DNA from: Perna viridis
Taxonomy: Eukaryota
Assembly: GCA_037379345.1 (NCBI GenBank)
Contig: CM074511.1
Location: 45,452,862-45,516,861 of the forward strand
DNA: 64,000 bases
Direction: 5' to 3'
In this document: positions 4,470-40,440 of the stretch, one piece after another
Layout of the letters: every line of letters begins with the position of its first letter
Position numbering within the stretch: position 1 is the first letter of the stretch
Notes under the pieces: model-generated
Database searches by the model: none
The model's input: only the letters and a program-made list of their open reading frames with translations
Told to the model about the DNA's origin: nothing
Position numbers and translations under genes: made by a program

Positions 4470-7400
4470 CATAATATCACTAGAAAACTATTGATCTTTC
4501 CAGGTAATTGCAAGATACATTAATATTTTAATGCAAGTTATCTATTAAGATAGGTGCACTAAAATGGTATTTAAATAATTAAATAAACAGTAAATTTGAA
4601 TATTAATAGCTCTTGAACTATCTTGCTACTGTTATACACATAAAGTAGTCATGATTTAACCATAGAGGTTTTTGCACAATATTTACCATATGCATATTTC
4701 TGTTTACAGGGTACCCAAACCTGGAACAAAAGCTCATGATGAAATGATGGCTTGATCATTTTAAAAAAGACAACATTGGATTGTCACCCTGCCAATGGAA
4801 GCTATGGATATCAAAGACTAAAAAAGCCTTCCGTTGGCTTCAGTCAAATTCGACAAAGACACAAAGACATTTACACAGTATCAAAACCCCAAAGGATACA
4901 GCATACAAAGTATCTTGTGTGAACATTTTAGGAGACATTAAGTGATAGTGTGGGATCATAAAATTATTGGATGAGTGGTACCATATTATATAATCTGTTG
5001 TGCAAGCAGTAATCATCATTTGACATTAAGATATAAGCGTAGTTGCAGTGTTTTCCCGTATTTTATTATTGACATCATCTTGTAGGATGTAACTGATTAC
5101 CATGAGACAAAATGATTTCAATTTGTGTGTGCCTACAGACATGTTTCAACTCTCAGTATATGTTCATATCATGTTTTGATAGAGTGCAATAAAGGTATCA
5201 ACATTTATGGAGTTGTGACTTTAATACATCATAGCATATAATTTACTTATCATAGCACATTATAAACTACATCACAGTACACTATGTGTAGAGTGATTCA
5301 ATGTTGGTAAATCGGTTTAAACTTTTTTTTTCAATTCACTCTCCTGATAGAATATTAGATTGGTTTTAAATAATTAGTTATGGCAAGGTAAATTAGGTCA
5401 GAATCCATAAAGTTCTCTTTTTTCTGTTTGTTTACTGTCACTCCGAAACAATATCCGATATCCGGGAAATCTGCATCCGTCATGGGACAGTTAACGGTAA
5501 ACAAGAAAACAAATAACTTAAAGACAAAAACTATTGTCTCTATAAGGAAAATGTTGCTGCATGTTTCTATCGTTCTATAAACAATGCTAATATGGAAGCA
5601 CACTTTTACTGAAAATCTGAATTTTACCATAAAGAGTGGAGAAATAGTTTAAATCAAGAATAGGCTGAAGGAGAATCAGTTTCTCCCTCGGAATCTGCAA
5701 ATGCAAACTGGCAGGAATTTTCTCACTGACCGATGGTTATAGAAGTCGTGTATTTTTAATCGCTGGTTTAAAATGACAGAAAACAATATCTTAAACCGAA
5801 ACGCAATGTGCATGCACGCACGTTGATATTAAGGGCATTTAATTCCTTGAAATGCGAACATTCTTAACATATTTATAAAAGATTTGCGATCTATATTGGG
5901 TAATACTTCGATAACGCTTTCCAGATAGCAGCAACCATAACCAGAAATCATTTGACATTGACATTAACGGAAATATCATTGCCCCTAATCAAAGTTACAA
6001 CGCATTAGTTTATCTGTATGTAATAGCTTGTTCATATACGATGTGAAAAAGAAAACTTTACCAGCTATATGCGACATTTCTGACGTCGTTCTGTTGCAAT
6101 TAAACAACAGTTTATGTTTATGACCTATTGTACATTAACAGCAATGTTTCAAAAGTATAAAAAGTATACTGAATTAACTAATAGAGCATGCGGTAAACGA
6201 AAACCCCTCCAGGACTGGTGTAAATTGTAGTGATCCATGCATCAAACATCTATACACACCTCGTTTGGCAAAGACATGCATGTGGTATATTGAACAGAAC
6301 ATAAAAATCAAAACCGAAAACTGCTAAGTTGCCAAATTTTATATTAACGAGTCATTCAAAAATACATAAGACTAGATTTTCCCAGAAATACTATTCGACG
6401 TATTTTATTTGGGACAGGAAAAAATACTCGTCTAACAAAAAGTTAAGACGAATTAGAAACGAATTACGTAATTTAGAATGGGGAAACGGAAAACTCTGCT
6501 TCTTGGAACTTGCTGCTATATATAGCACGTTAACAGTTAAATGATAATTATAAATTTTGATAACATTGTTCATTTATGCAATGTGAATATTCACTACTTT
6601 ATACTGTTCCGCCCAGGAACAAATTCGGTGCAGATGTTCGGGCTAATATGACACTCATTTAATGGGTGTTGTGTTATGCATCAACAACGCTTATTTGTCT
6701 GCAAAATTTCAAGAAGTTTTAAACACTGGGCATTTATGAACGTTATAAACGGTTTATGTCATTGAAGCCACTGGTTTATACGTCATAAAAATGATGCCGC
6801 ATTAAATGATCGAATAGTTCGCGTAACCCAATAACAGAAAACTTCAGTTTATATATACATTTTGTACCTGCTGTCAGCGGATAGATTCTAATTTAGTTCG
6901 ACTGCAATATTGCAGTCACGTACCCATATTTGCCCAAGACATTAGTTGTAATACCTTAATTTGAATGATTGCTCAGACTGAATTATATTTATGTAAATGA
7001 CACATTTCATGATCACGGTTGTATACTCCTGATTGTACATACTGTATATTTACCTTTATGTCATGTGATTTTACCTTTAATCGTGTCTTTATTTGGAAAA
7101 AGGTTTAAACTAGGACGTATAGATCCGTTGTACATGCCATTCAGAAAAATGCTACGTATTTTTATCTAAAGGTCAACAACAAATGTTTTATGTTTGCAGT
7201 TTAATACATTGACAGTAGAAATAGGTATTTTAACAGTTTACATGTACACTAGCTTGTTTAAAATTTGTACAAGATAAATCTGAACTAAAAATAATACATA
7301 GTATCAGTATGGTTGAAACCCTTGGATTCTAAATTCGGAATCAAAATTCAAGAAATCTTATATACACACCAATTCAGTTATTATCATATAAAAAGCTTCA

Positions 7401-8164
7401 TTTCTGTGACAAAACATTAAAAATTAACAAAGTTACAAGTGCTAACTCTTCATATATATGTAAATATTTATAAGTCCACAGCTTATTTTCTTACGTAAAT
7501 GAATATAACAATTCGTTTTATCCTGAATTGACATTACCTTAAATTCTTCGTTTTCCTTATATTATTCAATTTAAAAATAAGGTTCTAATATTTGAGTTCT
7601 GCTGATTGCTAACAATGATTTATCTTAGTCGGTAGCTTACCCAATGTATATCGGTCTTGAATTATTTTAACTTCACCGAAACTGCACTGATGAACAGTGT
7701 TAAACTCATTCAACCTGTAACAAAAATGCATAAAAGTTTTTAAAAATCTTTTGATGACTTTAACATTTGTCCCAATGCTGCAAGGAGCGTCTGAATAATT
7801 GCCCATTCTATAGCAAAAGGGAAATACGTTCAGCTCGTTTATTTGTAGAATCATAGCTGGGACTGTAAAACTCTTTGGGAAGTACCTTTAGCAACGATTT
7901 CTTAAATGCATTTAAATAATTTAACTCATTCTAAGGATGCTGATCATCCACTTGTACACCAATGATTTTCTTTTTAACGAATTTACATGTTTCAAGTGTC
8001 TTTACTCTTAAATTCTTTATAAATGTTTGATAGTTTATTGATTCACCCTTACAGATTAATGTCTTTCGATTCGTTTAACGAAAGTGGTCCGGTAGATCAG
8101 TACACCTTATGGTTCACCGTACCATTTATTAAAGTGCTAGTACTTTAAATTATGTACCGACGAA

Positions 8165-8196
8165 GGGTTAACGTATCGAGCGGGTTGGGAGAATTT
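8165..8196 (+). promoter_or_regulatory. Conserved upstream bipartite element of GADD45-2
   Basis: GGGTTAACGTA...GGTTGGGAGAATTT, matching 3100-3131. Confidence 0.6.
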
Positions 8197-8378
8197 TGCA
8201 AAATGAAACAAAGAAAAACAAAGAACTTAATGAGAAAAAATGACTGACAATAAATCAAGAATCATTTTCAATACCGCAAATCTGTTTTAATTGTTTTTAC
8301 AGTTTTCTCAAGATGGCATTCAAAAGTAAATTCAGTAATACTCGCCTTTTGTCGATGCTACAATTGTAATATGCATTA

Positions 8379-8408
8379 AGCTCCGCCCATACTCTGCCTT
8401 GGTATATA
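8379..8408 (+). promoter_or_regulatory. GADD45-2 core promoter (GC box + TATA)
   Basis: AGCTCCGCCC 8379-8388, TATATA 8403-8408; downstream ACACGTGGA shared with gene 1. Confidence 0.65.
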
Positions 8409-8569
8409 GTGAACGATCACTCGACGTTTAATAATACCATATTTTAAACGTCGAGTGAAACACGTGGATATACACTTGTGACTTAAACTTAATCTAAAAC
8501 ACGTTGATATATACTTTTGACATAAAATTAATCTAATAGTCTGATTAGTTGTAATTTAGAGAAGGAATA

Positions 8570-9539
8570 ATGACTTTCATGGAGGATATAACTGTTTTTC
8601 TGCCAACTAAAAGGTAAGAACAATGACCATCACACACTTGCCCTCGTAACACTAGTTGATTACATGTTGTAAACCCTTATACTTGCTAAAGTTCAGTCTG
8701 AGCTGTTAAAGAATTCTTAAGAATTTTCTCAATTAGCCTTTGATTTTTTTTTTTCACGTTTTCTTTTTTTAACAGAGCACATATTACTTCATTTTACCTT
8801 TTTATTATACAAAACTGCAACTGCTTCGTTTCAAATAGAAAGAAAGCTTTGTTTCTAATGATACATTTTTTTTTTTGCTTCAGAAACGTCAATAACGTTG
8901 GTTTTGCTCTGAAGGAGCTGCTTCAGAGAGCTGACAAGACGGACAGAGTGGTTGTGGGTGTCATGGAATGTGTACAAATTCTTCATAACAGGCCTGATGA
9001 GGTTAATCTCTGTATCCTGACAGAAACTGATGATGTCACAGCACAGATACACCACAAACTGGTAGAAGCCTTCTGTTGGGAGAACGACATCGTAGTTATA
9101 AAGGTAAATATTTGTACTATTCAATTCACTCTTTTTTTTTGTTTTTTATTTCCTTTTTTGTGAACATGCCAAGACCTTAATACAATCTTGTAAATAGGCT
9201 ACAGTCGAAACATCATAGAAATAGATAATGGCTACCAAGAGTTTCCTCAGATAAATGCAAAATGAAGAGAATTGACCTAGCCTTTAGTCTAGACTAACAA
9301 AATATGTTCTGCTAAGGGGTATATATTCACTGATTATTCTGTTATTCTTTGTTCAGGTCGAGAACAGCAAGAAAATGGACCAAATATTGTCTGGAAAGGG
9401 AACTCATCAAAATATAGGCGAAATTGGATGCATGTTGATACAGACTGCCGAGACAGACAATTGCACTGACGAGTTCATGGAAAATTATAATTCCATGTTA
9501 GCAGGCGTACAATGTCCTATTATTGACCTTCCAGAGTGA
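8570..9539 (+). CDS. GADD45: GADD45-family protein, paralogue 2 (148 aa, 3 coding exons)
   Basis: Exons 8570-8613, 8884-9103, 9357-9539; same structure as and close similarity to paralogue 1 (…DDVTAQIHHKLVEAFCWENDIVVIKV…CPIIDLPE*). Predicted 3'UTR intron 9573-9839; AATAAA 10290-10295. Confidence 0.95.
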
Positions 9540-10349
9540 CAGAATATCCTGGAATACTATTGATCTTTCCAGGTAATTGAGATGCAGTAACTTCCTTTAT
9601 CTAATATATAATCATTGCTTAAAAATGTTTGATAAAACTTGAAAGTACATGTAGATTTAAGTCTTAATGATGAATGTTTCATAATGTAAGATTTATAGGA
9701 GGAAGATTATGCTGCATAATGAACAGGCTTACTTCATTCATTAATCATGTATGTATCCATTAACCGAAAAAAAAACAATATATTGATTTGTGCTTTAAAG
9801 AAAATGTTACAAAGTATAATTATGCAATTCTTAATTCAGGAAACCCAGACCTGGAAATATACTTCACATCTAACTGAGAGAACATAATAGGGAGTTCTTC
9901 TTTTCACCATGGATGCCCTGGTTCAACGAGGGCTTTCATTATGGAACAAAAGTTTGAAGACTGCTGATGGCTTTGGTACCAATTACAAAGAAAAGTTCTT
10001 TCTGGAGTTAAATGGTGATTAACCATAGTTATGAGACATAATGACTAATTATATATGTAGAAGTATCTACATGCACTTTGCTTCAACATGTTTACAGTAT
10101 TAGGAAAGAGCTGAATTGTAGAAATACTGATTATTAAGAACATTATGAATGCAAGATGCACTTCGCCTGTGTTTTTTGCTGAATTATAAGTGTAACATGT
10201 TATCAATGTCAATCATTTAATTCGCATTTTATTTGACAATGTGTAAAATTTGGCTTAGGTCAGATATTGATATTTGAAGGTTATTTGTTAATAAATGATT
10301 TTAGAATTGAAGTATGACTACATTATTATTATTATATTAGTGAATTACA

Positions 10350-10520
10350 TCCCATGCAACATAGTTGCACAGGGTTTAATGTTTTGATGTGTCCGTCGTT
10401 CAGTCCATCTGCCCGTCTGTCTGTCCTCTTTTGTCATTTCAGCTCGAGTCAGACTACTGAACAAAATTTCACGAAACTTAGTTTGTAATTATGCACGTTT
10501 CCTTATTTTTTGACTGTGTT
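10350..10520 (+). mobile_element. Probable non-autonomous Helentron/HINE-like fragment
   Basis: Short hairpin TGCAAC-ATA-GTTGCA followed by a GTCC/GTCT microsatellite-like tract and AAATTTCACGAAACTT, the layout typical of DINE/HINE-like elements. Confidence 0.5.
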
Positions 10521-10759
10521 CTCCCTAGTCGAAGTATGTATATGAAACTATTAAACATGTCAATTCATATGGTTCTACAAAGAGTATGTCTTTTCGTTTT
10601 TGTGTTTGTTTTCATAATATAAACTTTTTATGATAGAATGCTTTGGGAAAAAAGATTTTCTTCCGCAAACACAAAATATACATCACAATGCATTGCCAAG
10701 AAACTCTATATTCTGAAACAGCACAAATATAATGTAAGTTATTTTACTTTAATATATGG

Positions 10760-10915
10760 TATATATAGTGAATATTACATGTCAAAATCAATATCACATG
10801 CCGTATCAACCCGAGACTCCTATATCACACCAAAGGCAACCGGCCCGCGAGTGATGTAGGTCGAGGGTTGATACCACATGTAATACAGATTTTGACAAGT
10901 CAAGTTCATTTATCA
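10760..10915. mobile_element. Palindromic MITE / fold-back element
   Basis: Arms TGTCAAAATC..ACATG..GTATCAACCC..CCTATATCAC and GTGATGTAGG..GGGTTGATAC..CATGT..GATTTTGACA around a ~22-nt spacer. Confidence 0.65.
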
Positions 10916-13900
10916 TATATTTTAACTATACGTAAAGTATTTTTGGCGAAGGGGTACGATGTAGGGTATGCGATATAGGTCTAGAGGTGTGATATAGGGT
11001 TTAAACAATCGCTTATAATACAAATATAAGAAGGTATATATTTAAGCTAAATATAAGATACATGTATTAGGCTGATGTGACTGCTTTCAGACGAATGATG
11101 CATGTATCAGTCCCCAAGGTACAAACGTTGGGTGTCACACTGAAACAACCTAAAGGTACCAGACGACGCACAATTACAGGTAGCACATTAATATACGTAC
11201 GGGACAATTAAAACAAATGGTCTATATAATAAACATTCACATTAATGTCGTCGACGTAAAAAAAAGTACAAAAAAATCCTGACTGTATGCATAAACAAGC
11301 TCTTATTAAGATAAAAAGCCAAATTACATTTTGCAGCCTCCTTTTATCTCGAGGTGATATTTTAAACTTTGTCCCTGACATGAACCGACTAGTGGTTTCG
11401 GAGAAAACTAACAAGTACACCTACATAAGGAAAGGAATAGACGATCAGTTGTAAGTAATAGGAAAATCACTGATGGGCGAAAGATACCGGAAACACACGA
11501 AGTGTTATGATATATCCTTCTACATAATAATATTCTCAAGGACTAAACTTGACACGAAATATGATTAAGAGTGACAAAGGAAACCCCAAAGCACAAAATT
11601 ACAATGAACATGTAAATGGTAACAAAACTGTATAGTTGAATCTCTTGCAACAAATACAGATATTATTGACGTTATTGAAAAATAAGATATAATAGCGCCA
11701 TAATGATATCATTAACTGTTTAAACTTTCCAAGAATGAATCCATTACTACCATGAAACATGTATACGCACAATACATGTATAGAAAGGCAACCAAATATG
11801 ACTTTTTGCAGCGTTGGTAATATATACAACCTGGATTTACATGGGATTAACGAAGACCAAAGAAAATTTAAGAGGAAAAAAATTTCATGCAGATCTCAGA
11901 TCATGCTTATGTGAAGCTATGGTCTTTTAAACCATACCTAGCTTTCATATGTAAAACGTCTTCATATACACGTCCCACGTGACATGTCAAGTACACGATT
12001 TTATGTTGTAGGTAGTGGAGAGAAAAAGTCGCCTGTGTGATTTCAAGTTCTGAAATTGAAAGCTTTTTAATGTTTCTATTACATTTAATGGAACTAATAA
12101 AACCAAAATGAAATATACATCATAACGAAATGATGATTTTCTTTTCATTCAAAAGAAATATGCTCAAGCGGAACCGCCAAATCACGCTTCTTTTTTTTTG
12201 CAAACACAGACCCAGTTAGGAAATTGATCGGTTGTATAACTGCGGGTTTTATTTTATTTTATTTTATTTTTTGTTTTGTTTGTTAATGTACACCTTTTTC
12301 TTCAAGAAAAAGTTTCTCCGTGTTAAAACTTATGCAATACAAATACATGCAGTAACAGTAGTTTTATAACTTTTGTTTATTGTTCTGTTTTCTCGTGTCT
12401 CCATTAGATATGATTTTGATTTATCTGTGTCATATGATCAGTACATGTGGTTTACAAAAAGTTCATTCATAAAAAAGAACAATCACGGAAAACGAGACGT
12501 ACCGGAAACACGCGATTTGTTAGATACTAAATGTACATATTATCATAATCTTTGTTTAAATAGACTACGACAAGTGACATGAAAACTAAACATAGGAAGT
12601 GGTGTCACACGAAAAAGATCACAAACAAGAAATACGGACAAAAGTCTACCAACTCTTTCAGAACTTTAAACCACAGAGACGTCAGATATCTCAAGACAAA
12701 AGTCCGAAGTCTGTTAAAAGCGTCAAGTTTATTAAATTGGTTTCGATGAAGTCATATTCTAAATTGAACTGAGTCTTTTTTATGTAGACATCTTAGACCT
12801 ATGTAAAGTGTAGAAAAGCTATAGAGTTGTAATTTGTATGTGCATTCATCGCGTGAACCAACCTAGCTCTTTATGAACTGAACTTTATTAAGTGCAGTCG
12901 GAGATTGTTAATAACACTTGTGTCATTCTAACAAATATTCTTTAGAAAGCATCAAACGTGCACCGAAGAACTATAAAAAAATATATTTGCTATCGAACTG
13001 AAAGACCGAGTAAATATTCCTTTTGATGACAACAGCAGTTGTCCATTTAATGGTGCGGAAATAAAATGCAGTTGAAAAAGCCAACAGTAGTCGATCCTTC
13101 GTGAAGAAGGTGAATGCGTTTAAAACTGAATCATGAGAAGAGATCGACCTACCAAATATAACTTAATTAGCATTTTGGTCGGTTAATATTATTCAAAACT
13201 TTTTCCTACATGTTTTTCCAGGATAATGTTTCGGGGTAGAACGGTCGGAACTGCAATTTGCACTAAGGGTTATAGTTCTGACAAGTTGGGAGAATCTGAA
13301 CATGTGCATATCAATTGATGGTGATAGCATCAACTATTATTTTTCTTTTCCGATAATTCATACATATGAAAGAACCCATAAAATATTAAAATTTTATGTA
13401 TTACAAAAACCCTTATTCAAATACAAACAAGAAATACAGCCTTGGTATCTTCGTACCATGGTACAACGTGAATGATCAAATCAATTAAATTGCTTAACTG
13501 TGCAGTGTCTAAGTCAACGCATGTTATTATTTTCTCTGCACCTGATGTGGCTTTTGGAGAATAACGGTACACTGATGTATTGTTTTGTATTATTGATGTT
13601 TTGTGTAATTTAGTAATTAAAACTAAAACTATACAGATTGGTCTATGGTTTTATTAGACAGAAACAACCAATAATACGAGTACCTGGGAGGTTTGTTGTT
13701 GACCGCTGGCGGTAATCCAGCATCGTAGGAGAAAAAAAAACTCCAAGGCCGTGGTATTGATATATGTATTTCTTACTATCTACAATGACTTAGGTTAGTG
13801 AACTTAATGAGGCTATAACTGTACAATTGCATATTCAACCTGAAATCAATAGGACATGGTAACTGTTTAGATAACATCGTTTACTAACTGTGTCAGATGT

Positions 13901-15423: not shown

Positions 15424-15525
15424 AAAACACTCTCATGCAAAGATACCGGAAGAGTTAGTAAAAACACTCTCATGCAAAGATACCGGAAGAGTTAGTAAAA
15501 ACACTCTCATGCAAAGATACCGGAA
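15424..15525. repeat. 37-bp tandem repeat, ~2.7 copies
   Basis: AAAACACTCTCATGCAAAGATACCGGAAGAGTTAGTA repeated with period 37. Confidence 0.9.
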
Positions 15526-18500
15526 TTCCTTGGTCATTTTACATAAACATGTAAAATTACAATTAAATAAATAACAAATGCCATCATTTAATGTCATAAT
15601 TGGTTAATATTTTGCTCCTTTAAACAATAATGACGCATGTTTTTCAACCTAGGATATGATTTGTTGATTCACACAGAGAATTTTCTATCCCATTTTAACA
15701 AAACATCTGGAACGATGAATCCATTGACGTATAAATTCACCTTTCAAGTTGAATTTTGCCAGTGTCTTCTTATTCAGTCCTACCTTTTCATTTCAAATTT
15801 CATCGTAGGGCATCCCACAAGTTTCACCGAGTTTGCGCCCAGATTACTTTTTTTTCGTGGCATAGAGAATTATCATTAAACGCGTTTCAAATAAGCCTTG
15901 AAATCGTAGCTTTGAAAAATATGTGGTATGCAATTCAAAAATTCAAATTTGTATTTGTTGTAAGTGTATAATCATCTTTGCGTAATGTATGTAACGTGTA
16001 ATTTTTGCAAAAATTGTAGCGTGGGATGGAGTTAGCCATATCGGATTCAAAAAGATTTTATTACCTGGTAAACAGAAAATGTACATATAGTAAACACAAA
16101 AGAATTACGGAATATAAGAACATGTATCCCAACGTGCTTTAGTTTCTAATGAAAGTGTCTATTTACAAAGCCGATTTGTAAAACGTAATGATTATACAGT
16201 GTTGTTCATGTGGAAAGCAACACGTACTTAGGAACGGAACTAAGTTCTGAAATTGAATCTACATGTATATGTTTTCGAAACATTCAGTATCACGCGATGA
16301 ATAGATGACTTTGGGTGCGATGCTCCAGAATATAAGCACCATGCATTTATTCAATAACTTATCGTTATTTGAGAAGTGTTTTGATTTGATCTTTAAATAA
16401 TTTGAAAGCAACAATTTTGAAAATGCAATCAAATTACTTGTATAGTACTTCTGGTATATTCTAGTATCTGGATAAATTAGGCGATAACCTTTTTTTTTAA
16501 GTAAACATCTCACAGATATATCAACGACACTCAATTTGACTTTTTAATTAAGAAATAGGGGCAACGAGTTGCACAGGAACAGGATTCAGATTTCTAGAAC
16601 AGCATTTGTTTGAAGCCTAGGGTATTTATCCTCATGACGGCTAAGACAAGGAAGCTTCAATTGAACACTCGGGAAACATAAAATTAACACAAATATGTTA
16701 TTTAGATTTACAGGGATTTGGTTCTATACATGCGTCAGTCTTAATTCTAAAAACGCAATAAACATGATATTTAACACATAAGATTTCATATACATTTCCA
16801 TTGCAGAAAAGATGATCGAACACCATTTTAAATATAGTTTATACTAGTCCCCAGAGTAAACCTGGTTAGGCTCCGATGTCATTGGTTATACGTAGGCAAG
16901 TATGTCTATAGCAGTACGACTACCCGCGTTTCATTACTGAAAGGTGTAAAGATGTGAAACCTTGTAAAACAACTATTCTAATCGCCGATTTTACAAGTCT
17001 GTATCTAAGTTAAACTCTTATTTTACCAACTTTGCTCTTTTGTTTTGTACTGCCTGTTTAAATTGCAATATACCGGAAACATTTATCATAAATGGAAATG
17101 GGTAGTTTGGTGCGTTATAAAACCTGGTTTTACCTATACAATTTCCATCGGATATGCCTATACCAAGCCCAGAACATTGCGGCATTTACACGGACTTTTC
17201 TCTTTCGACTATTCCTTTTTCCTATCATTTCAGTAATTTTGTTATTACCCTTTATTAAAAAAATATGGAATATAAGTGTTAGATTTCAGAAGTAATTCGG
17301 ATTTGCACTAAATTTAGATTTTGTTATATATGTATAAATAATCATAAATATTTCTATAAAACTAAGTATTGGACAAATCCAAATGGTTCAATAGATTGAT
17401 ACATGTAGGTTCTACTTAACATGTATTTCTAGTAAGTGAAGTATTCGACATGTTACATGTATGTAAATTATTTTTGGCTCGATTTCTTATTAGACTTATG
17501 TAATGTAAATGGATCAAGTGTTTTGCTGTAACAAATACGTGCATTCCCACGGAGAGGATACAACTAACGGCGCAGTTACTCCACGTGGTTGATCATGAGT
17601 ATTGATTGTGTTTATAGTACTGAAAGACCGAAATTTTTTACTTCAATATATGTGTTAGTATGCCAATTATGAACAGCTTGTCTCTACGTGTAGGTCAGAA
17701 GAAATATGAAAATAGAAACAAGTTGGCTCTAGCATTATAGAGTACAACCGATGTTAAAGATACAAAATAAAAAATGTTTATAAATACGGTTTGTGGTGCC
17801 CTGTTAGTTTTGTTTTTTCTAAAGTGTTAAGCATAGAAAAAATAAAAATGAAAAATAAACAAAAAAAGACAAAATAAGCCACGTAACTGTCTTAAAATCA
17901 ATTTTCGGGTACTCTAATCCTAGCTCGATCCGAACCTTTAATTTGCAACTTGGATTAACTGTTTTGTAAAATTGAATTTTGAAAAGAAATCAACTATCAT
18001 TGCAATGACACGAAAGATAAAATATCTTAATTTGAAAGGCCCATACGAAAATAATACTATGAAATATACCAAGTAGTTCTTTGGCACTCATCTTATTTTT
18101 ATTTTCATAATAAATTGAAAGTATGGATGTTCAGCTAACTTGCCTTGTGTAGATAGTAATTTTTGATATTTGAAATATTGTATTAAATTCATAAACAGCC
18201 GACAGTCGACAGTCATCTTGCAACAGAGCATTGTTTTTTCTGTCTACAGAATAGGCTTTTAACTTGAAAAAATTTTGAATCAGAATTCAAACAGAAATAA
18301 AAACAAATAGAAATAGAACTCACTTGGTGATATTCCCGCCTTCCTCCCTAGAAAGCATATTTGAAATAAAAAAAAACAATCAGTCGGATGAAAAACTAAA
18401 TAAGAGATGCACAATGGCATAATGTGAAAAAAAAACTGTGTGAAAGTTTCAACAAACCCCAGTCAGTCTTTTTAGAGGAGTTGCGAACAAGAACTAGGAT

Positions 18501-21500
18501 AGGCTAGAAACCACTAATTCCACTTCCCATAGGCCTTTATGCTAATTTCACAATATTCAATGGCTTCTCTGGACTTTACCTTAACTTTAAACTACAGAGG
18601 ACTATATATCAGCATGATTCTATTCTACATATGTCAGCTCACAATCCTCAGAATGGCATATGGGGTTAGCAGACTTGCAGTGCAGTACTGGTCACCGGAA
18701 GTGAAGGGTCTATAGATAAATAGCATGGAAAATCTCAGTGTTTTCACAAGATAGGGGTATATTTAGAAATCATTATGGAGATTAGGCTTCACATCACAAG
18801 AAACAAAATGCACCTATAGAATGTACAGAAATGTTTTTCCTTTCAGAAACTGTTTATTTTTTTTAAATAAGATGATAACTTTTTTCACAGCACTATGAGG
18901 AACAGGGGTAATTTCTGTGTAAGACTATTTTTGCGTACGTTCAAAATGCTCATTGGTTGAATTGGTGGTCTGTAACCTATGTACCTCCTCAAGTAGGGGG
19001 TACAACAAAACACACAATTGGTAAATTGAATACGTTTCTATCCTTTTAAATAGCGTTAATGCATATATTAACACTATCAGTTGACCAGTAACTAATTCCT
19101 TTTACATAATAATTGAGGGTGATAACTATCTGAAGTAAAAAAGACCTTGGCGTTATCTCTATATTACGACAATCAAAATGCTTCCCCAAATGGCAAAGAC
19201 ATTATGAAAATACCGAAACAAAATAACTAGATGTGACAACTTTAAAACTGTCATATTGAAAGTTCACATCATTTTCAGATAGAGATAGAATTAAATTTTT
19301 ACAGTATTCAAACACTTACAATGGAAATTGAAAAAAAATATATGTTTTCCCAACAATTTCCCCATTCGTTGTCATAATCATTCTCATTTAAGGAAATGGG
19401 TCGCATCGACCGTACTTTCATTGTATGATAGAACAAAAATAGTATGGTACTTTCTATGTGTATTGAGGTTATTGAAAGAACTAGACGTCACAATGAGAAA
19501 TTTCAGTTAAAAGTTGTTGTGAACAAATCTTTATGTTGTCCATAAACATCTAAAAACAGGTTCAACCTAGCTTTATCGAAACAGTTTTCGATACTACAGA
19601 CAGCAACCGACGTATAGTTTCATGCAGGAATTATGTCAGCAACAATTTTTTATCAGGTCTGTTTACAGAAATTAACATCGTTTCCATTTAACTCACTTGA
19701 TATATTACATGTACATGTAGGTGCATTAGTACCTTTCTATCTGTTTCAAGTAGTTTCTATATCTGTTACTTTCATATTTTCTTATTTGTGTTTTATCAAG
19801 ATATACAAACACAAAAAAAGTTAAAAAAGAAAAAACCTTGAAAAAGCAACTCGGATGTTTTTAAAGAAAAGGGAAAGGATGCTATAAAAGTCTTAGTGGA
19901 GGATCTGGGAAGAGAATTCCCTGGGGTTGTCCCCTCTTTTGTTGGAAATCTATGTTTACTTTGTGCAAAATATTTGCAAAAATTAGCAAATGAACGCATT
20001 AAATTGCTCCTTTTTAAAAAATCTCTGGATCTTCCCCTACACTGTATTTTGTTTTAGCGTGTTTTTTTTTCATGATATCTTTGTTTACGCGAATAATTTC
20101 CAGAAATATTTTTTTTGTAGTTGGACCTATCAACTGTCCTTTTGTAATGTTAGAATTTGTTCTACATGGTGTTTTTACAAATAAAAGGCTCAACAAAAAA
20201 ATTAATTATCTTTACACACAATCTCAGACTAAAGAGGATCTTTTCCTGAAAACGCCTCAACAAAAATATGTGATAAAAGAACATATATGTAATCTGATGA
20301 AACAATATGTTGCCTTTTATACTAACATAGCATTGAATAGTCATTAAGATTTAATAACAAAGGTGGCATAAAACATAACATGATATATCTGACAACAATG
20401 TCATCAACAAAGACCAATTGCCAACATATTACCAGCGAAAGGACTGTTTAAACTACTCTGTCAGGCTACAGGCCTCAACACCCTAACCATTTTCCCCTAG
20501 AGAAGCATCTTGGAAATACTTTGTCATAGTAGTGGTGCTACTTTCCCGATAAAATAAAAATCGGTAACATTTTCTATTTTTATGATTGACCTTTGGCGAT
20601 CGTCGAGAACAAATATTATCTATTTACCAACTCTGACATTCTCTGTTTTAAATATTGTGTTCAGTTTTTGAAAGCTGTAGCAAATAGCAAATAAATAAAT
20701 TAGTAATCTTGTGCAATGTCAAATACCAAAAACAAAATTACAGATACGAAAGACCTTTCATAAATGGTTACTCAAGAACGCTCAATTTATCAAGACGCGG
20801 ATATGCAGATGCAGGTGTTTTAAGTGTTGCAGTGATACCCTCGCTACCCAATACGATAAAGGGTGTGTCTACACTTACACATGACGGGTAAATCAAACGT
20901 GAACGTTGGTTAAGTAGACCACTGTTAGCTGAAGAGACAGTTTTACAAAATACAAACGATCTTTGAAAAGATAATACGATCCTTATAAAAAGGATCTTAT
21001 CGAGAAAACGCCTTAACAATACATGCCATTTAATAAGAGTTTTTTAATCTGGTAAAATTTGTATTAAGCCAGTCATTCTCAGTGATACTATTTAAGGTAA
21101 AAGGTGAAAATATGCATATATGTTATCCGATATTATTAACAATTAGCATCAATGTGAGTGGAATAACAGTGGCATTGTAACAGAAACAATGTCCATTATA
21201 CGACACACCAATGAAAACGTTCGATAACAAAGAAACTCGCAAAGTAAACCTAGAGCAAGGAAGATCCGTTGGATTGACAATCTTTGTACATTAATTATAA
21301 GGTCGCTGACCGTCAGCACAGGACAGGTATATTTAAAACATTTGTTTTGGTTTTTACTAGAGCGATAAGGAAGCAGTTGACAGGTTGAACTGAAGTCAAC
21401 CATGATCCTTAATTACTGTTATCGGTGACCACTGGAATACAATCCTTGATCATATGGCCTATTTATTGTTCGTTTCTTTAATGTCAAACAAAATCGCGCT

Positions 21501-21519
21501 TTCGGGTTAAACTGAGCGA

Positions 21520-21668
21520 TAGGCTGATCCAGACATAAATTGGGGGTTTCAATCCAGAAAAAAATAAAAAGGGGGTTCAGGCCTGAGGTATTTTTGCACT
21601 GAATTAACAATTTTCAACAAAAGGGCGCTCCTACCATTCGAACAAACCCTTTCCCTGGATCCGCCACT
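21520..21668. mobile_element. Short MITE-like element (GGCGGATCCAG-type termini)
   Basis: AGGCTGATCCAG ... CTGGATCCGCCACT termini with a G-rich interior; related copies near 31490, 32025 and 37790. Confidence 0.5.
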
Positions 21669-22016
21669 TAACTCTCTTGGAAACTTGTTTGCAATCCTGT
21701 AAGTTTTGATTTTTACACTCTTTAAGAAAATATCTGGCGTACAGTTACGGACATAAGGAAAATCTTGCAGATTAAAATTATGTAATGCATTGTTAAAATT
21801 AAAAGTTAAAAGTTAACGTTCTATTTCTACCGTTGTTTCCTGTATACAACTGTAATGACATATTATATCCATGAACAGAGTCTTTGCGCTGACAATTACT
21901 TTCATCATTATCGCTAAGGGAGGTACCAGGAATTGTCTGACGAAAACAAGGACACTTTGAAGATATCAGAATTTGGAAGGTTGTTATAGCATTACAGTGG
22001 TCTCCCGGAGTGTAAA

Positions 22017-22299
22017 CAGGGGCGTAGCTAGGCCTATTTTAGTTGTACGAAAATTATGGCGAGGTGTCTTGGGGGGGGGGGCGCTCAAGGCCCCCGGTGA
22101 GTCCGGCAAGGCAAAGCCCTGAGGGAAACTCCTGAATTTTAACGATTTTGGAGCCAGTTTTTCAGAGCCTATACTACGTTCATGGTATGCATATGTGATA
22201 AATAACCTTTATTTCATCTTTAAAATGTGTGTTTTTATTTTTGTTACTTTTTCCGAAAGTACGCAAATGCGTATTTGCGTATAGGCAGCTACGCCCCGG
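22017..22299. mobile_element. MITE with terminal inverted repeats
   Basis: CAGGGGCGTAGCT ... AGCTACGCCCCGG; flanked by an apparent target duplication GTAAA (22012-22016 and 22300-22304). Confidence 0.75.
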
Positions 22300-22695
22300 G
22301 TAAACAAAAAAAGGTTAATCTCATATTGCGGCTATCCCCCGTTTAAAGTAAAGTTCACGAAAATACAGATCTGTGAAGAAACCCCTCTACATTTTTAATG
22401 GATATATAGGAGCTTAAGACACCACAACATCCTAAAATGGGTTATTTGCAGAAAAATAATTTGCAAATTCGGGAAAACTCGTTTTCAGTAATGAAAGTGA
22501 AATCGAGAGAATTACGTCTTACGATTCATTCATTCCTGCATGTTGATATGGTGTTTCTAGTCAGATAAAGATACATTTCCTTCTTTGAGTATATGCCATA
22601 CTATACGGACAATAACCTCAATTTCCAATAATACGAATGTTCAATGCTCTAATTATGTTATAAATGAGGTTAAGGTTATTGGTTCAATGTCCAAT

Positions 22696-22728
22696 GGTTC
22701 GGTTCCTACACAGTTTGGGAGAATTTGG
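22696..22728 (+). promoter_or_regulatory. Conserved upstream bipartite element of GADD45-3
   Basis: GGTT at 22696 and TGGGAGAATTTGG at 22716, the same 20-nt offset as in genes 1 and 2. Confidence 0.5.
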
Positions 22729-22820
22729 TACTTATAGTAAAAGAGGAAAGATTATCAATAGATGGTTTGGAAAAATGAAATTTTAACAAGTTTCTATTAT
22801 TTTATAATATAAAGAAGGAT

Positions 22821-22822
<2 letters not shown>

Positions 22823-22856
<34 letters not shown>
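22823..22856. repeat. (TA)n microsatellite
   Basis: About 17 TA units in the GADD45-3 promoter region. Confidence 0.95.
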
Positions 22857-22859
<3 letters not shown>

Positions 22860-23109
22860 CATAAAATGTTCTAAACGGATGATATCGAATGGCTTCTGTT
22901 TTGTACGAATTAATCATTTGGCAGTGGGAGGAGTCTACCTAGAGAATTAATCAGTTTAATTGAATTGATCGAATTGAATATAAAACAGTAAATGCTTAAA
23001 ATCGCTATAGACAACATAAGGGATACAAAAATCATCCTCAAGGCAAGCTGAACACGCTTTCAACTGTCCATATTCCCCTGGAAAAATCCAAAGAAGATTA
23101 GTCGGCGTA

Positions 23110-23140
23110 AGCTCCGCCTACTATACATATACGTATAAAG
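23110..23140 (+). promoter_or_regulatory. GADD45-3 core promoter (GC box + TATA)
   Basis: AGCTCCGCC 23110-23118, TATAAAG 23134-23140. Confidence 0.65.
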
Positions 23141-23243
23141 ACTTCGTTCCTCTTTGTTCATATTAACGTTATATCGCCCAGCAGAAGCACGTTGGATAAA
23201 TTGAGGAATAATATTATTGTGTTTTAGTATTAGCATTTGAAGG

Positions 23244-24667
23244 ATGACTTTTCTTGAAAACTTTGGAATTATTGTGGATGCACAAAGGTAAGCAGTGTGC
23301 ATGTTTTTTCATATTGTATTACAATGAGGTTACCCGAAACTATCAATGATGCAAGTACATGCATTATTTAAAGAGCTTCATTAAATGCTTAGTTTAAAAA
23401 AAAACTTAACTTCTTTATATTTGCATTTTAATATGCAGCTTGAATACAGCATTTGTACAGTGGTGGAAACAATACAAAGAAATCGATATTACTTAACAAT
23501 GGACTGAAAGTGTATAACAAAGCCAAAGTTTATACTATTTCATTAGCAGTCCATAGATTAGTAGTAATGCATCATATTACGTTCAACGTCATCAAACAAC
23601 TTCTGTAGGACGTGTAGTTTTGTATGTTGGCAGAGATACTCTGTAACGTAGGCGTCGTACTGCCACTCCTGGTATTAACCTCATCATGTATATGGCAATG
23701 GTTTTTTTTTCTAGGAACATCAACAATATTGGTATGGCTTTGAAAACATTGATACAGAAGGCTAAAGATGAAGGGAGACTTGTATTTGGAATATACGAAT
23801 GTGCTCTTAAACTTCAAAAGTAAGTTTTTTTTCTAGAGTATTATATAACCCCCATAAAATAAATAGACAACTTGTTCTACATGTTTATCCCCAGAAAGAT
23901 TGAAATTTCTAGTATGCATGCTTAGATTCGACTTACATTAGTATATATGCTGCAGTTTCATTGTAACATATCAAATGTTGTTATCCAATGTTGCATCAGC
24001 TAATTTTTGTATGTTATATTTACAGTATTCCAGAAGACGTGGCTCTTTGTTTGTTACCTGATGTGGTTGATTGTGATGATGTTACAGCTAACATACAGCA
24101 TAAACTGGTCGAAGCATTCTGTTGGGAAAATGACATTGAAGTCATTAAGGTAATTACATATAAATGATAAATAGTATGGGGGTAAGGGGAATAGGAAGGA
24201 ATGTTAGCGTGTAAAATCCGCTTCTTGTGTAGTTTAAGTAGTTGCAAAAATCATTCAACTTTGTTTGCACAAAATATTTAATATGTCTTCCTTATTAGAT
24301 CAATCTACAAGAAACATCCTCATAAGGGGATTTTTAAAACTTTCCTGAAAGACTTAACAAATGGGGAAATATATGCCAAAATTCTATCGTTATGGTAGTA
24401 TCTGAACTTGTTAAAGATTTAACTTTGTATAATATTTAATTTTAATAGTACAATGCACAAATTAAATTATCATAATATCTTTTTCAGGTCAATAATATCC
24501 AAAAGATGTGGAAATTATTCTCCATGGATAAATGTGATACCAATATTACCGACATTGGCTGTGTCTTGATTCAGAATGAGAAAACAAACAATAATGAAAC
24601 AGAGTTCATAAACAACTACTATTCTGTGTTAGCAAACCAAACACCTGCTGTCTCCTTACCTGATTGA
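23244..24667 (+). CDS. GADD45: GADD45-family protein, paralogue 3 (150 aa, 4 coding exons)
   Basis: Exons 23244-23287, 23715-23819, 24026-24149, 24488-24667. Protein MTFLENFGIIVDAQRNINNIGMALKTLIQKA...GIYECALKLQNIPEDVALCLL...DDVTANIQHKLVEAFCWENDIEVIKV...DIGCVLIQ...PAVSLPD*. Predicted 3'UTR intron 24699-25097; AATAAA at 25361 and 25448. Confidence 0.95.
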
Positions 24668-27289
24668 TAATTGAGCATTACCACCTTTACATTACCAGGT
24701 AAGATCAGTGACAATTTTAACATCACCTGGTGAAAAATATAGGTCATCAAATGTCTACTGAAAATGTATTGCCAATTAGGTGTTTCATTTCATAAATAAA
24801 GAAATATTGCTAGACATGTTAAACAACCAAATATATAAAAACCATAGGAAGTCAAATCTTATTTAGTCATAAAACAATATAGCATTTGATATTGAAACAT
24901 TGCCTTCAGCCATCAATCTACATGTTGTAGAATGGTTATAGAAAAGTATGATTCAACATTAATAAGCCAAATGCATGTTGTTGCATTTATTTTATACCTG
25001 GTTTAGCTTTGATATATTTCAAATGTCAGCAAAATGCTTTCATTATCATCTTTTTATCTCCATTCACAAGTATTTAAATGTATTAACTTCATTTCAGGTA
25101 TCAAAAGCCTGGAAACCAATTTTGGTTACATTCTAGTAAGTAAGCTGCATGAGGACAATGTATCCAGTTATTTGGTCCATGGTTGGCCAAATATCGTCAG
25201 TTGGAGTGCTCCACACTCCACTAAAAGTCAGCTCAGCTCAGGGGTATCCTGTTGAATAAGACCTTAGGAGGTTATTTTTATCCTTAGATGGTATTCCTAA
25301 GGAAGGTTACTGGAGAAAATGTGTCAATACAGGTGTGAAAATGAGGTCTACATGGTTATAAATAAAAGAAGCTGGATGGACAATTGAATGGCAAATACAT
25401 AGACCACTCGATATTTATTACTGTACCTTTTCATTATTTCATGTTTAAATAAAATGATTTAAACGTCTATTTGTGTTCTTTTTCACATTTTTGATAATAG
25501 TAAATTTATTGTTTGTATTGTTATTATAAGAAAGTGAGAAGAAAACAAACACTTGCACCCACACAAATCATCGTGTGAACATTGGAAAAAAAATCCGAAG
25601 TATTTTGTCTCGCATTATTAAGTATAGAACAGGAGCAGCAAAACATGTACATAGTGGGCGTTGTTGCAGGTGTCCTTGCATAAGCTGATTCAAAAGGTGG
25701 TGGGAGCCCGGACACCATTTATGCTCGAAAATTGATTTTATAGAAATCCATTAACAGTCCATCTTCAGGAAACCAATGGCCCTTTCGTTTCTTTATTCGT
25801 TAAAGCCTTTATGATCAATGTAGAATGCCACGACTGATATCCAGTTAAAAAGAAGGTTCGAATCTCGTAAATTGCCGCTGATGTAAAGTTGTGTGTCTAT
25901 GGCTGTGATTTGTCTTGAGTGTAGTCATTGACTTCAGCGGTCAGTCACACTAAATAGCTGAAAACCTGCAGATAAACAGACAGATCCTTCAAGGATCGAT
26001 AACCCAGATTTCTACAGATGTAGTTGACCTGCTTTAAGTTGTTGTAAATGCAATTGGTGACAACAACATCCTGTTTGAAGTGAACTCGCATGGACAGTCC
26101 ATCATACTTATACTTTTGCTACTTATCAAAAAAAATTGAAGTTTTCTTTGTTAATTGAATATCGAATGAATGGTGGCGTTTTGATGTACATCAATCATTT
26201 CGCTGGATTGTGGTACGAAGATTGGTATATATGCAAGACGGTTTATTCCGACAAATTTAAAAGTTCTGCCAATTAGATTCTCAATACCCACACTAACTGT
26301 TATTAATTGTCGTCGCATGGCTGTCTCCTACGCCACTAGTCAGACGTGGGTGCTAGGACCACGCATTTGTGTACTTCTTTAAATGTTAAACGTTTTTTGT
26401 CTTTTTTCAACCTACCACAAAAATACTTTTTAAAGCACTGAAAAGTTCATGTGCATCCATGGGCTATTTTTTGTGTGTGCAGGTTTTGAATTCTCAGTTA
26501 GAAAGTATACGACTAAACAAAGAAGCCACCATGCAATGCTGGATATCCGGTGAGTTGTCCTTGAAAAAGCAGTATACTGATCGCCAGTGAGCTAATGTAC
26601 ATATATACTTAGTGTATGATATCCAGTCAGTGTATTTTTTTTTTCATTGCGAAAGACCAAAAAAGTTATTATATCTTCATTTCGATAGTATTTGATGAGA
26701 CTTTAAGAAGACATTTTTTTTTTCGTGAAGTTGACTTTCATAAGCATATTAATTATGTAAAATCGACACAAAACAAAGCCTCGTTCTCTTGAATTTAATT
26801 AATATTTCTGTCATTATTATGATATATCCTATGTCCCTGATCATGCTTTGTAAAAAAGGATTGTAATATATAAACATTGATTTTGATGGCATTAATTATT
26901 ATCATCATTAATAATTAATCAAACGACAGTAGTTTTAAAAACGACAAAATGTTGACAAATGACATACGATACTTCATATAACAAAGTTGACATCGGTCTA
27001 TATACTATACCATATTTGCATGCTATTGTGTCATCATCGGTGAATTAGCGGTCCCATCAGCACAAAGAACAATTTACCAAAAAAAAAAAACAACCATTAT
27101 TCATTATTTTAAAAGAAAATGAGTATTTTTCAACCAATGACTGATATCTAAAAAATATTTTGTAATAGACCTTTTGAGACGCATTTCCCCAAAGCCCTGA
27201 TTCAGGAGTCTGTTATACATATAATTATGGCGTTCAAGGAAAACAGAGTAGTTAGTACTTGCTATAGCGTAGCGAATCAATTGTGAAAT

Positions 27290-40036: not shown

Positions 40037-40440
40037 GTCTACCCCGGACTTGACTTTTTATGAGCAACTCGGCGGGTGTTTCTAGAAAAGCAGAGGACGC
40101 TTACCCTACCGGTGCACCTGGTCCATGCTCCCAGTTTTTAGTGGAGTCCGAGTTGCTCATTTACTTTTGTTACTTTGTATGTATGATTTTAGTTACTTTA
40201 TGTTCTTTGTTGTGTGTGTCTGTTTTCCATTTCTGGTCTTTGTCCCTGGATTACATTCTTTTGATTACCGCTATAACCTTGGTTCCCTTGATTACTCTTG
40301 ATTCCATAATATTCCAGTAATAATCTAGCATTGGACGTTTCCAGAAGATCTCTTGAATTTTTCAGGAACAACATCGAATGGATACCACAACGAGATTAAC
40401 AAGTGTTGTGGTAAGACCGAAGACCCTCTAAATTCAGAAT
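40037..40440 (+). mobile_element. Solo Penelope-like terminal repeat plus inverted RT piece
   Basis: 40037-40299 is the reverse complement of the 42.65-43.41 kb units; 40300-40435 resembles 44320-44445 in the opposite orientation to the repeat. Confidence 0.85.

What the first reader, a model, noticed from the sequence alone, without database searches (positions are those of the whole stretch)
4497..25114. Splice-assembled RNA hairpin at the 3'UTR exon junction of three GADD45 paralogues
Seen: after the predicted splicing, gene 1 reads TTCCAG|G-GTACCCAAA-CCTGGAA (4498-4503 | 4710-4726), gene 2 TTTCCAG|G-AAACCCAGA-CCTGGAAA (9566-9572 | 9840-9857) and gene 3 TTACCAG|G-TATCAAAAG-CCTGGAAA (24692-24698 | 25098-25115). 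The stem core and the exactly 9-nt loop are kept while the loop sequence and the rest of the UTRs diverge, even in the distant gene 3. The 5' arm is in the upstream exon, so this stem exists only in spliced mRNA. In pre-mRNA the 3' arm can instead pair with the acceptor (YYCAG|G) and occlude it. Established: GADD45 has the L7Ae/L30e RNA-binding fold, yeast L30 autoregulates splicing via a structure in its own transcript, and Gadd45 mRNA is a key NMD substrate in Drosophila and mammals. Inference: a candidate undescribed splicing-coupled post-transcriptional switch, possibly autoregulatory, controlling GADD45 mRNA fate. No kink-turn was evident.
Basis: partly seen in the sequence, partly recalled or inferred. 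Interest (0 to 1): 0.85.

Follow-up and report, generated by a model that had tools for sequence, protein, structure and literature searches.

The report
Conserved intron-split hairpin in GADD45 3'UTRs
Mussel-type GADD45 stress genes carry a small conserved RNA hairpin about 30 bases after the stop codon; in most copies an intron splits it, the splice junctions are real, and one scallop gene keeps the hairpin without the intron, so it probably regulates the mature mRNA and is not a splicing switch.

Summary
RNA reads and contigs from three studies confirm junctions 4503|4710 (gene 1) and 9572|9840 (gene 2).

The pairing CCAGG / 8-10-nt loop / CCTGG recurs at the same place, 27-42 nt after a TGA stop, in:
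- four further paralogues of this genome
- two Mytilus californianus genes
- Tegillarca granosa
- spliced arcid and mytilid-like mRNA contigs
- one scallop gene that has no intron there, contiguous in both genome and mRNA

The only stem pair free of splice-site constraint (p5) changed C-G to U-A twice independently. Two other arm changes give G.U. The rest of the last exons cannot be aligned. A junction hairpin of 5 bp or more arises in only 1-6% of shuffles per gene.

So a conserved hairpin is likely real, and it matches no Rfam family.

The "splicing-coupled, possibly autoregulatory switch" is not supported:
- The intron's first G lets the same helix form in pre-mRNA.
- The loop is 8-10 nt and semi-conserved (AANCCAAAA).
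- There is no kink-turn.
- The intron lies under 50 nt from the stop.
- The intronless scallop gene keeps the element.

What the hairpin does is inferred, not shown.

The parts
3486..5200 (+). GADD45-like gene 1. ATG at 3486, coding exons 3486-3530, 3842-4063 and 4297-4469 (stop TGA 4467-4469), last exon 4710 to about 5200 (AATAAA at 5189).
   Evidence: sequence, translation, tblastn; RNA contigs cover 4400-4503 joined to 4710-5203/5315
4498..4503 (+). Gene 1, 5' arm TTCCAG. It is the end of the upstream exon, 34 nt after the stop.
4504..4709 (+). Gene 1, stop-proximal 3'UTR intron (206 nt, GT..AG), verified by RNA.
   Evidence: 26 reads from 21 starts in X21, plus contigs in X1, X2 and X12
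4710..4726 (+). Gene 1: closing G (4710), 9-nt loop GTACCCAAA (4711-4719), 3' arm CCTGGAA (4720-4726). A 7-bp stem forms in spliced mRNA.
   Evidence: pair probability 0.94 in a 105-nt context; -10.4 kcal/mol, z = -3.3
8570..10400 (+). GADD45-like gene 2. ATG at 8570, stop TGA at 9537-9539. The coding introns are confirmed by RNA.
9547..9554 (+). Gene 2 only: an upstream copy of the 3' arm (TCCTGGAA). In silico it competes for the 5' arm.
   Evidence: the MFE structure uses it; junction-hairpin probability 0.04; P_shuffle 0.002, but not general across genes
9566..9572 (+). Gene 2, 5' arm TTTCCAG.
9573..9839 (+). Gene 2, 3'UTR intron (267 nt, GT..AG), verified by RNA.
   Evidence: 5 reads plus contigs in X1, X2 and X12
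9840..9857 (+). Gene 2: closing G, loop AAACCCAGA, 3' arm CCTGGAAA (8-bp stem).
   Evidence: -10.0 kcal/mol, z = -3.7
23244..25650 (+). GADD45-like gene 3, which has an extra coding intron. Stop TGA at 24665-24667.
24692..24698 (+). Gene 3, 5' arm TTACCAG (core CCAG 24695-24698).
24699..25097 (+). Gene 3, predicted 3'UTR intron (399 nt, gtaaga..ttcag). Not tested with reads.
   Evidence: homology with the verified junctions
25098..25115 (+). Gene 3: closing G, loop TATCAAAAG, 3' arm CCTGGAAA.
   Evidence: P = 0.99; z = -4.5
36480..38616 (-). GADD45-like gene 4, divergent and on the minus strand. Stop TGA at 36887-36885. Predicted donor CATCTGA|gtaagt with the exon ending at 36846 (39 nt after the stop). 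It has no CCAGG/CCTGG, and the acceptor is unverified (candidates 36693|36692 and 36514|36513).

Best explanation
The element is a conserved cis-acting RNA stem-loop in the proximal 3'UTR of a pteriomorph-bivalve GADD45 subfamily. It has a 5-8-bp stem with core CCAGG/CCUGG and a 6-10-nt A/C-rich loop with consensus AANCCAAAA, and it starts about 24-38 nt after a TGA stop. An old stop-proximal 3'UTR intron lies exactly between stem pairs p2 and p1, at CCAG|G. In most genes the contiguous hairpin therefore exists only after splicing. One scallop paralogue lost the intron and kept the hairpin.

Shown: the junctions are used. Both arms and part of the loop are kept while the surrounding UTR has decayed. 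Arm changes are mostly compatible with pairing, and two of them are independent compensatory double changes.

Inferred: the hairpin acts in the mature mRNA as a binding site for a trans-acting protein that sets turnover or translation of these stress-inducible transcripts. The partner and the direction of the effect are unknown.
For: Junctions.

The same architecture occurs in paralogues A, B and C of this genome, M. californianus beta-like and gamma-like genes, Tegillarca granosa, spliced arcid mRNA contigs L032-L034 and mRNA contig L031, and intronless scallop gene 1 in Pecten and Argopecten, where genome and mRNA are colinear.

Pair table: p1-p5 are paired in 14-16 of 16 genes. p5 is C-G in 11 and U-A in 3, from two independent events (own paralogue C and scallop gene 1). 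Permutation gives P about 0.005 on 13 collapsed lineages. L031 has G-C to G.U at p2. Argopecten gene 1 has A-U to G.U at p3, in a gene where no splice site constrains the 5' arm.

Paralogue C was a prospective test. Its exon ends TTCAG rather than CCAG, and the matching CCTGA was then found 10 nt behind a strong acceptor that carries the family loop.

The hairpin is predicted with probability 0.83-1.0 in 12 of 14 genes in a 105-nt context. Tool folds of the five contiguous examples give z = -1.8 to -3.7.

Shuffle null: 1-6% per gene. There is no other colinear similarity between last exons.
Against: Pairs p1-p4 never co-vary. Their 5' side is the splice consensus CAG|G, so for them conservation cannot be separated from a splicing constraint.

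The covariation evidence rests on one position and on an alignment put into register by the structure itself.

Scallop gene 2 and paralogue D carry a mismatch or only 4-5 bp. Paralogue B needs a one-base register shift.

The semi-conserved loop also fits a linear motif. The core stem is weak (about -6 to -10 kcal/mol). In gene 2 an upstream competitor wins in silico.

Several junctions are predicted only: gene 3, paralogues A-D, Mytilus and Tegillarca. No structure probing or functional data exist. The element was not found in Pinctada, and Mercenaria and Solemya lack the CCAGG/CCTGG pairing although they appear to keep the intron position; their acceptors are unverified.
Confidence: 0.6

Rival explanations
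1. The conserved block CCAG|GAANCCAAAACCTGG is a linear, single-stranded binding site for an RNA-binding protein, a miRNA or an exonic splicing enhancer. Its self-complementarity is incidental and partly imposed by the CAG|G splice consensus.
For: The loop letters are semi-conserved (consensus). Pairs p1-p4 are invariant. Scallop gene 2 and paralogue D tolerate mismatches. The stem is short.
Against: There are two independent C-G to U-A double changes at p5, and two changes to G.U. C at position -4 of the donor exon is kept in 11 of 16 genes, where splicing does not require it. The intronless scallop gene keeps both arms, and its 5' arm changes A to G in a way that preserves pairing only. Loop length varies from 8 to 10 nt, which a linear site would tolerate poorly.
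Confidence: 0.17
2. The element acts in pre-mRNA. The 3' arm pairs with the 5' splice site (CCAG|GU) across the intron, or with the acceptor. This either bridges the splice sites to help removal of the 3'UTR intron or masks a site to delay it.
For: In silico pre-mRNA folds pair the 5' splice site with the 3' arm at P = 0.97 (gene 1) and 0.69 (gene 2), and pair the acceptor with the 3' arm at P = 0.99 (gene 3). An A that could pair with intron +2 U precedes CCTGG in 6 of 9 intron-bearing genes.
Against: Scallop gene 1 has no intron there yet keeps the hairpin with a compensatory pair. The three window genes disagree on which pre-mRNA pairing wins. Gene 1's intron is removed efficiently, and gene 2's apparent retention rests on about 3 reads. 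Long-range in silico pairs are unreliable.
Confidence: 0.12
3. One reading: a splicing-coupled, possibly autoregulatory switch in which GADD45 protein (L7Ae fold) binds its own transcript and/or the intron routes the mRNA to NMD.
For: From the literature only. Gadd45 mRNA is a conserved NMD target (PMC4848089). Some stop-proximal 3'UTR introns are NMD-sensitive, most clearly at 36 nt or more from the stop (PMC7310861). The hairpin does straddle the junction.
Against: There is no kink-turn, asymmetric internal loop or tandem G.A. The intron lies 27-42 nt from the stop, under the 50-55-nt rule. An intronless orthologue keeps the hairpin. The 5' arm is already complete in pre-mRNA. No data connect GADD45 protein to the element.
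Confidence: 0.06
4. Chance or plain shared ancestry without function.
For: Genes 1 and 2 are close paralogues. CAG|G is present at most junctions.
Against: The chance of a junction hairpin is 1-6% per gene, against 13-14 of 16 observed. The flanking UTR is unalignable even between genes 1 and 2. The element is kept across Mytilida, Arcida and Pectinida. A contiguous form of the motif occurs elsewhere in the genome only at chance level (3 hits against 1 control).
Confidence: 0.04

Closest known systems
[quoted passage not shown] 2020, PMC7310861)
   Same: An intron under 50 nt after the stop whose position is kept across distant species, in a stress or growth-control gene. In that paper a subset of such genes is sensitive to EJC/UPF1.
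   Different: That class is defined by position only. Here a conserved hairpin straddles the junction. The taxon is bivalves, and vertebrate GADD45 genes are not reported to have this intron (my own knowledge, not tested here).
3'UTR decay or translation stem-loops bound by proteins (Roquin CDE/ADE, Smaug SRE, histone stem-loop, IRE)
   Same: A short conserved hairpin in a 3'UTR with a partly conserved loop, in a tightly regulated mRNA. The likely mode of action is a protein-binding site.
   Different: The loop is 6-10 nt and A/C-rich. It is not a Py-Pu-Py triloop, a CNGG loop, a 4-nt histone loop or CAGUGN. There is no Rfam match. The element is split by an intron.
Yeast RPL30 autoregulation (L30 protein binds a kink-turn in its own pre-mRNA and blocks splicing)
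   Same: A structure at a splice site of a gene that encodes an L7Ae/L30-fold protein.
   Different: There is no kink-turn. The intron is in the 3'UTR. The hairpin persists without the intron. Binding has not been shown.
Intron-bridging helices that pair sequences near the 5' and 3' splice sites (yeast and Drosophila examples; my own knowledge)
   Same: The 3' arm is complementary to the donor exon end plus the intron's G, and it lies 10 nt inside the next exon.
   Different: Known cases lie within introns and promote or select splicing. Here the pairing survives splicing, and survives intron loss.
NMD control of Gadd45 mRNA (Nelson et al. 2016, PMC4848089)
   Same: The same gene family, with post-transcriptional control through the 3'UTR.
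   Different: That work was done in Drosophila and mammals and mapped no hairpin or junction element. No NMD data exist for bivalves.

Membership tests
Kink-turn / L7Ae-family binding site (RPL30-type autoregulatory element) | An asymmetric 3-nt internal loop flanked by a canonical stem and a stem that opens with tandem sheared G.A/A.G pairs | tested here: not met
   Every fold gives an uninterrupted Watson-Crick/G.U helix closed by a hairpin loop. No internal loop or conserved GA/AG pair appears.
Roquin constitutive decay element | A 5-8-bp stem closed by a pyrimidine-purine-pyrimidine triloop | tested here: not met
   Loops are 6-10 nt.
Smaug/Vts1 recognition element | Hairpin loop CNGG(N) | tested here: not met
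   The loops, such as GUACCCAAA, AAACCCAGA, AAGCCAAAA and AAUCCAAAA, contain no CNGG.
Any curated Rfam family | A covariance-model score above the family's gathering threshold | tested here: not met
   cmscan of four mRNA contigs that carry the element found only a sub-threshold hit on the opposite strand (RAGATH-11, 24.5 against 79.4 bits).
Stop-proximal 3'UTR intron class | A spliced intron that begins under 50 nt downstream of the stop codon | tested here: met
   The distance is 34 and 33 nt for the RNA-verified genes 1 and 2, and 27-42 nt across relatives.
Stop-proximal 3'UTR intron class | Position conserved across species | tested here: met
   Confirmed by mRNA in arcids, contig L031 and Argopecten gene 2. 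Predicted in Mytilus, Tegillarca, Mercenaria and Solemya. Lost in scallop gene 1.
Canonical EJC-dependent NMD target through a 3'UTR intron | An exon junction 50-55 nt or more downstream of the stop | tested here: not met
   The distance is 27-42 nt.
Structured RNA element supported by covariation | Compensatory double substitutions that keep pairs | tested here: inconclusive
   One pair (p5) shows C-G to U-A in two independent lineages, and there are two changes to G.U. Pairs p1-p4 are invariant. The alignment register was set by the structure. R-scape was not run.
GADD45 (L7Ae-fold) protein family, for the host genes | PF01248 domain and GADD45 homology | tested here: met
   Hits are named GADD45-like by NCBI at 65-67% identity and carry PF01248.

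The most novel reading that the evidence does not exclude
The hairpin works as a licence for spliced mRNA. Only correctly spliced GADD45 mRNA presents the contiguous stem-loop next to the stop codon. A bound factor, conceivably GADD45 itself or an NMD-modulating protein, would then decide whether this conserved NMD-target mRNA is shielded or destroyed. That would make the junction hairpin together with the stop-proximal intron the long-sought cis-determinant of GADD45 mRNA surveillance in molluscs.
Probability: 0.1. Interest if true: 0.8.

Novelty: new variant of a known kind. Interest (0 to 1): 0.5.

Why it matters
GADD45 genes are classic stress and DNA-damage effectors and are used as biomarkers in mussels. 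In flies and mammals their mRNA is the NMD target whose degradation is needed for viability, yet no discrete cis-element has been defined.

This finding gives a short, sharply bounded and conserved 3'UTR structure that can be tested directly with arm and compensatory mutants, pull-downs and structure probing. It shows a functional RNA helix whose two halves lie in different exons and co-evolve across an intron of 145 to about 2,300 nt. It also offers a natural control, an orthologue that lost the intron but kept the helix.

It remains a lineage-restricted element of unknown function, so its reach is moderate.

Tried and rejected
1. A general three-part switch, with an upstream competitor for the 5' arm. 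The competitor is significant only in gene 2 and Pecten gene 2, not across the 16 genes.
2. A motif shared with other genes, or retrocopies. A genome pattern search gave 3 hits against 1 control, and none lies near a GADD45-like sequence.
3. Stop-codon readthrough or a coding explanation for the block. The frames after TGA close after 7-24 codons without conservation, and the loop length varies (sequence inspection).
4. A DNA-level element. This is rejected because the co-varying positions lie 145 to about 2,300 bp apart in DNA.
5. MAFFT/RNAalifold on ungapped junction windows gave no useful consensus, because the loop-length differences put the arms out of register. I therefore counted pairs on a register set by the structure and say so.
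6. A metagenome scan for more bivalve GADD45 loci found nothing.
7. Literature searches found no description of a GADD45 3'UTR hairpin or of bivalve GADD45 UTR features.
8. Pinctada shows no such hairpin. Mercenaria and Solemya appear to keep the intron position but lack the CCAGG/CCTGG pairing, and their acceptors are unverified.


Full report
**What is in the window**

The window is AT-rich (about 33% GC). It carries four GADD45-like genes: three on the + strand (ATG at 3486, 8570 and 23244) and a divergent one on the - strand (38616 down to about 36480). The closest named proteins are Mytilus 'GADD45 beta/gamma-like' at 65-67% identity, with PF01248.

The whole genome (723 Mb) holds at least four more copies within about 85 kb upstream on the same chromosome. 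I call them A, B, C and D.

Protein searches used a single-exon ORF by reference with a region restriction, or database proteins.

**Check of the observation**

All quoted letters sit at the quoted coordinates.

- Junction 4503|4710 (GT..AG, 206 nt skipped) has 26 stranded raw RNA reads from 21 start points, plus one contig in each of three further runs.
- Junction 9572|9840 (267 nt skipped) has 5 reads plus three contigs.
- The runs come from three studies. Both coding introns of gene 2 were confirmed as well.
- Gene 1's intron is removed efficiently. Gene 2's intronic depth (2.3 against about 6) rests on about three reads and does not exceed that of its first coding intron by a meaningful margin.

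Gene 3's junction (24698|25098) could not be tested. It is inferred from gtaaga...ttcag and from homology.

**Relatives**

Using database proteins found with the exon-2 ORF and a profile search, I fetched genomic loci and Logan mRNA contigs. The same arrangement appears in the following genes.

| Gene | 5' arm \| closing G - loop - 3' arm |
|---|---|
| M. californianus beta-like | TTTCCAG\|G-AAGCCAAAA-CCTGG |
| M. californianus gamma-like | CACCAG\|G-AAGCCAAA-CCTGG |
| Tegillarca granosa | ATCCAG\|G-AATCCAAAA-CCTGG |
| Arcid mRNA contigs (three, already spliced) | GCCAGG-AATCCAAAA-CCTGGTA |
| mRNA contig L031 | TTCCAGG-AAACCTAAT-CTTGGAA |
| Own paralogue A | ATCCAG\|G-TAACTCACC-CCTGG |
| Own paralogue B (one-base register shift) | see call |

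The distance from the stop codon, TGA in every gene, to the junction is 27-42 nt.

**Two informative cases**

1. Scallop gene 1 has no intron at this place. The Argopecten mRNA contig is colinear with the genome through the stop and the 3'UTR. Thirty nucleotides after the stop it reads CTCAGG-AAGCCCAT-CCTGAG in Pecten and CTCGGG-...-CCTGAG in Argopecten. The hairpin is therefore kept without the intron. Pair p5 changed from C-G to U-A, and in Argopecten p3 changed from A-U to G.U.

2. Own paralogue C ends its exon with TTCAG instead of CCAG. I treated this as a test. About 2.3 kb downstream there is a strong acceptor, ttttacag|GAAACCAAACCTGATAC, which carries the family loop followed by CCTGA. 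This is exactly the complement of TCAGG, and it is a second, independent C-G to U-A change at p5.

**Weaker cases**

Scallop gene 2 keeps the intron; the Argopecten mRNA confirms the junction against the genome. Each species has one mismatch in the core, and alternative 5-bp CAGGA/UCCUG pairings remain possible.

Paralogue D has only CAGG/CCUG, or 5 bp if a neighbouring U-A pair is counted, and is no better than shuffles. Gene 4 lacks the motif and its acceptor is unverified.

Pinctada shows no such hairpin. Mercenaria and Solemya appear to keep the intron position but lack the CCAGG/CCTGG pairing.

**Statistics**

- On a register set by the structure, p1-p5 are paired in 14-16 of 16 genes and p6-p8 in about half.
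- p1-p4 are invariant. Their 5' side is the CAG|G splice consensus, so they cannot inform on structure.
- p5 is free of that constraint: C pairs with G in 11 of 11 genes, and T pairs with A in 3 of 4. Permutation gives P about 0.005 on 13 collapsed lineages. This is not fully corrected for phylogeny.
- Shuffling the downstream exon gives a junction hairpin of 5 bp or more in 1-6% of trials per gene.
- The hairpin has pair probability 0.83-1.0 in 12 of 14 genes in a 105-nt context.
- Local folds give z between about -2 and -4.5 for most genes.
- The 500-nt last exons share no other colinear similarity, even between genes 1 and 2. Only positions 1-17 match.
- The junction-anchored consensus is cCAG|GaA.CC.A..Cc.gG. 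The loop is therefore partly conserved, and its length is 8-10 nt rather than exactly 9.

**Pre-mRNA**

The intron begins with G, so the 5' arm CCAGG already exists before splicing. In silico, the same arms pair across the intron in gene 1 (P = 0.97) and gene 2 (0.69), while in gene 3 the acceptor pairs with the 3' arm (0.99).

The statement that the stem exists only in spliced mRNA is therefore too strong, and the three genes do not agree on an acceptor-occlusion model. In gene 2 an upstream TCCTGGAA (9547-9554) out-competes the junction hairpin in silico, but such competitors are not general.

**Comparison with known elements**

- There is no Rfam match.
- There is no kink-turn, triloop, CNGG loop or histone-type loop.
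- The intron belongs to the recognised class of conserved stop-proximal 3'UTR introns, some of which are sensitive to EJC/UPF1, most clearly at 36 nt or more from the stop (PMC7310861).
- Gadd45 mRNA is an essential NMD target in flies and mammals (PMC4848089). No hairpin or junction element is described there or in the bivalve literature I could search.
- The contiguous motif is not found elsewhere in this genome above chance.

**Conclusion**

It is most likely a functional, previously undescribed 3'UTR stem-loop of a bivalve GADD45 subfamily, bisected by an old stop-proximal intron.

Because the element survives intron loss with a compensatory change, its function most likely lies in the mature mRNA, as a protein-binding site that controls stability or translation. 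That function is inferred. A linear-motif reading and a pre-mRNA splice-site-pairing reading remain possible.

**Limits**

- Many junctions are predicted only.
- Covariation rests on one pair.
- Look-ups for contigs and reads were exhausted before oysters, chitons, gastropods and the Mytilus alpha-like genes could be examined.

Noticed in passing
G000:C1:45372723-45490515 (window 1-38616 plus loci L005, L008, L009/L040, L013/L039): At least eight GADD45-like genes lie in one cluster of about 120 kb: six on the + strand and two divergent 'alpha-like' copies on the - strand. All eight examined end in TGA. So do all the relatives examined, 16 of 16 in total, in an AT-rich genome.
   Followed up: partly
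window 5622-5686: A piece of about 45-65 nt has very high depth in RNA contigs (up to 2927 in X2 and 1223 in X12), with several different loose ends on both sides. It looks like a short repeat or a shared exon-like piece present in many transcripts.
   Followed up: no
window 9547-9554: Gene 2 carries an extra upstream copy of the 3' arm (TCCTGGAA). It pairs with the 5' arm in the predicted MFE structure. In gene 1 the homologous letters are degenerate (TCACTAGAA).
   Followed up: partly
L015:11265-11283 (Pecten maximus); same place in Argopecten L022: In scallop gene 1 a second predicted hairpin, CUGACC-N7-GGUCAG, encloses the TGA stop codon itself. It is conserved between the two scallops.
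   Followed up: no
L040:61-2374 (own paralogue C): The 3'UTR intron of paralogue C has expanded to about 2.3 kb, apparently through inserted repeat-like sequence. The splice-site-flanking hairpin halves are still kept and co-varied.
   Followed up: partly
window 36846 / 36692 / 36513 (minus strand, gene 4): Gene 4 has a consensus donor (CATCTGA|gtaagt) 39 nt after its stop. One candidate acceptor (36693|36692) would create TCTGA-N9-TCAGA, a different 5-bp junction hairpin with a 9-nt loop. I found it with a complementarity-seeking pattern, and it is unverified.
   Followed up: partly
L018:15165-15680 (Mercenaria mercenaria): A predicted intron lies 40 nt after the stop. The next exon starts with its own local hairpin, TGGAC-AGCACAC-GTCCA, instead of the CCAGG/CCTGG pairing.
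   Followed up: no
proteins P0006 and P0011: Logan gene calls for two mollusc contigs read the terminal TGA as W and run on into the 3'UTR. This is a gene-calling artefact, but it happened to expose the junction sequence.
   Followed up: yes
window 40060-40160: Another first-stage note (s1-780823) flags a structured RNA in a PLE terminal repeat here. I did not examine it.
   Followed up: no
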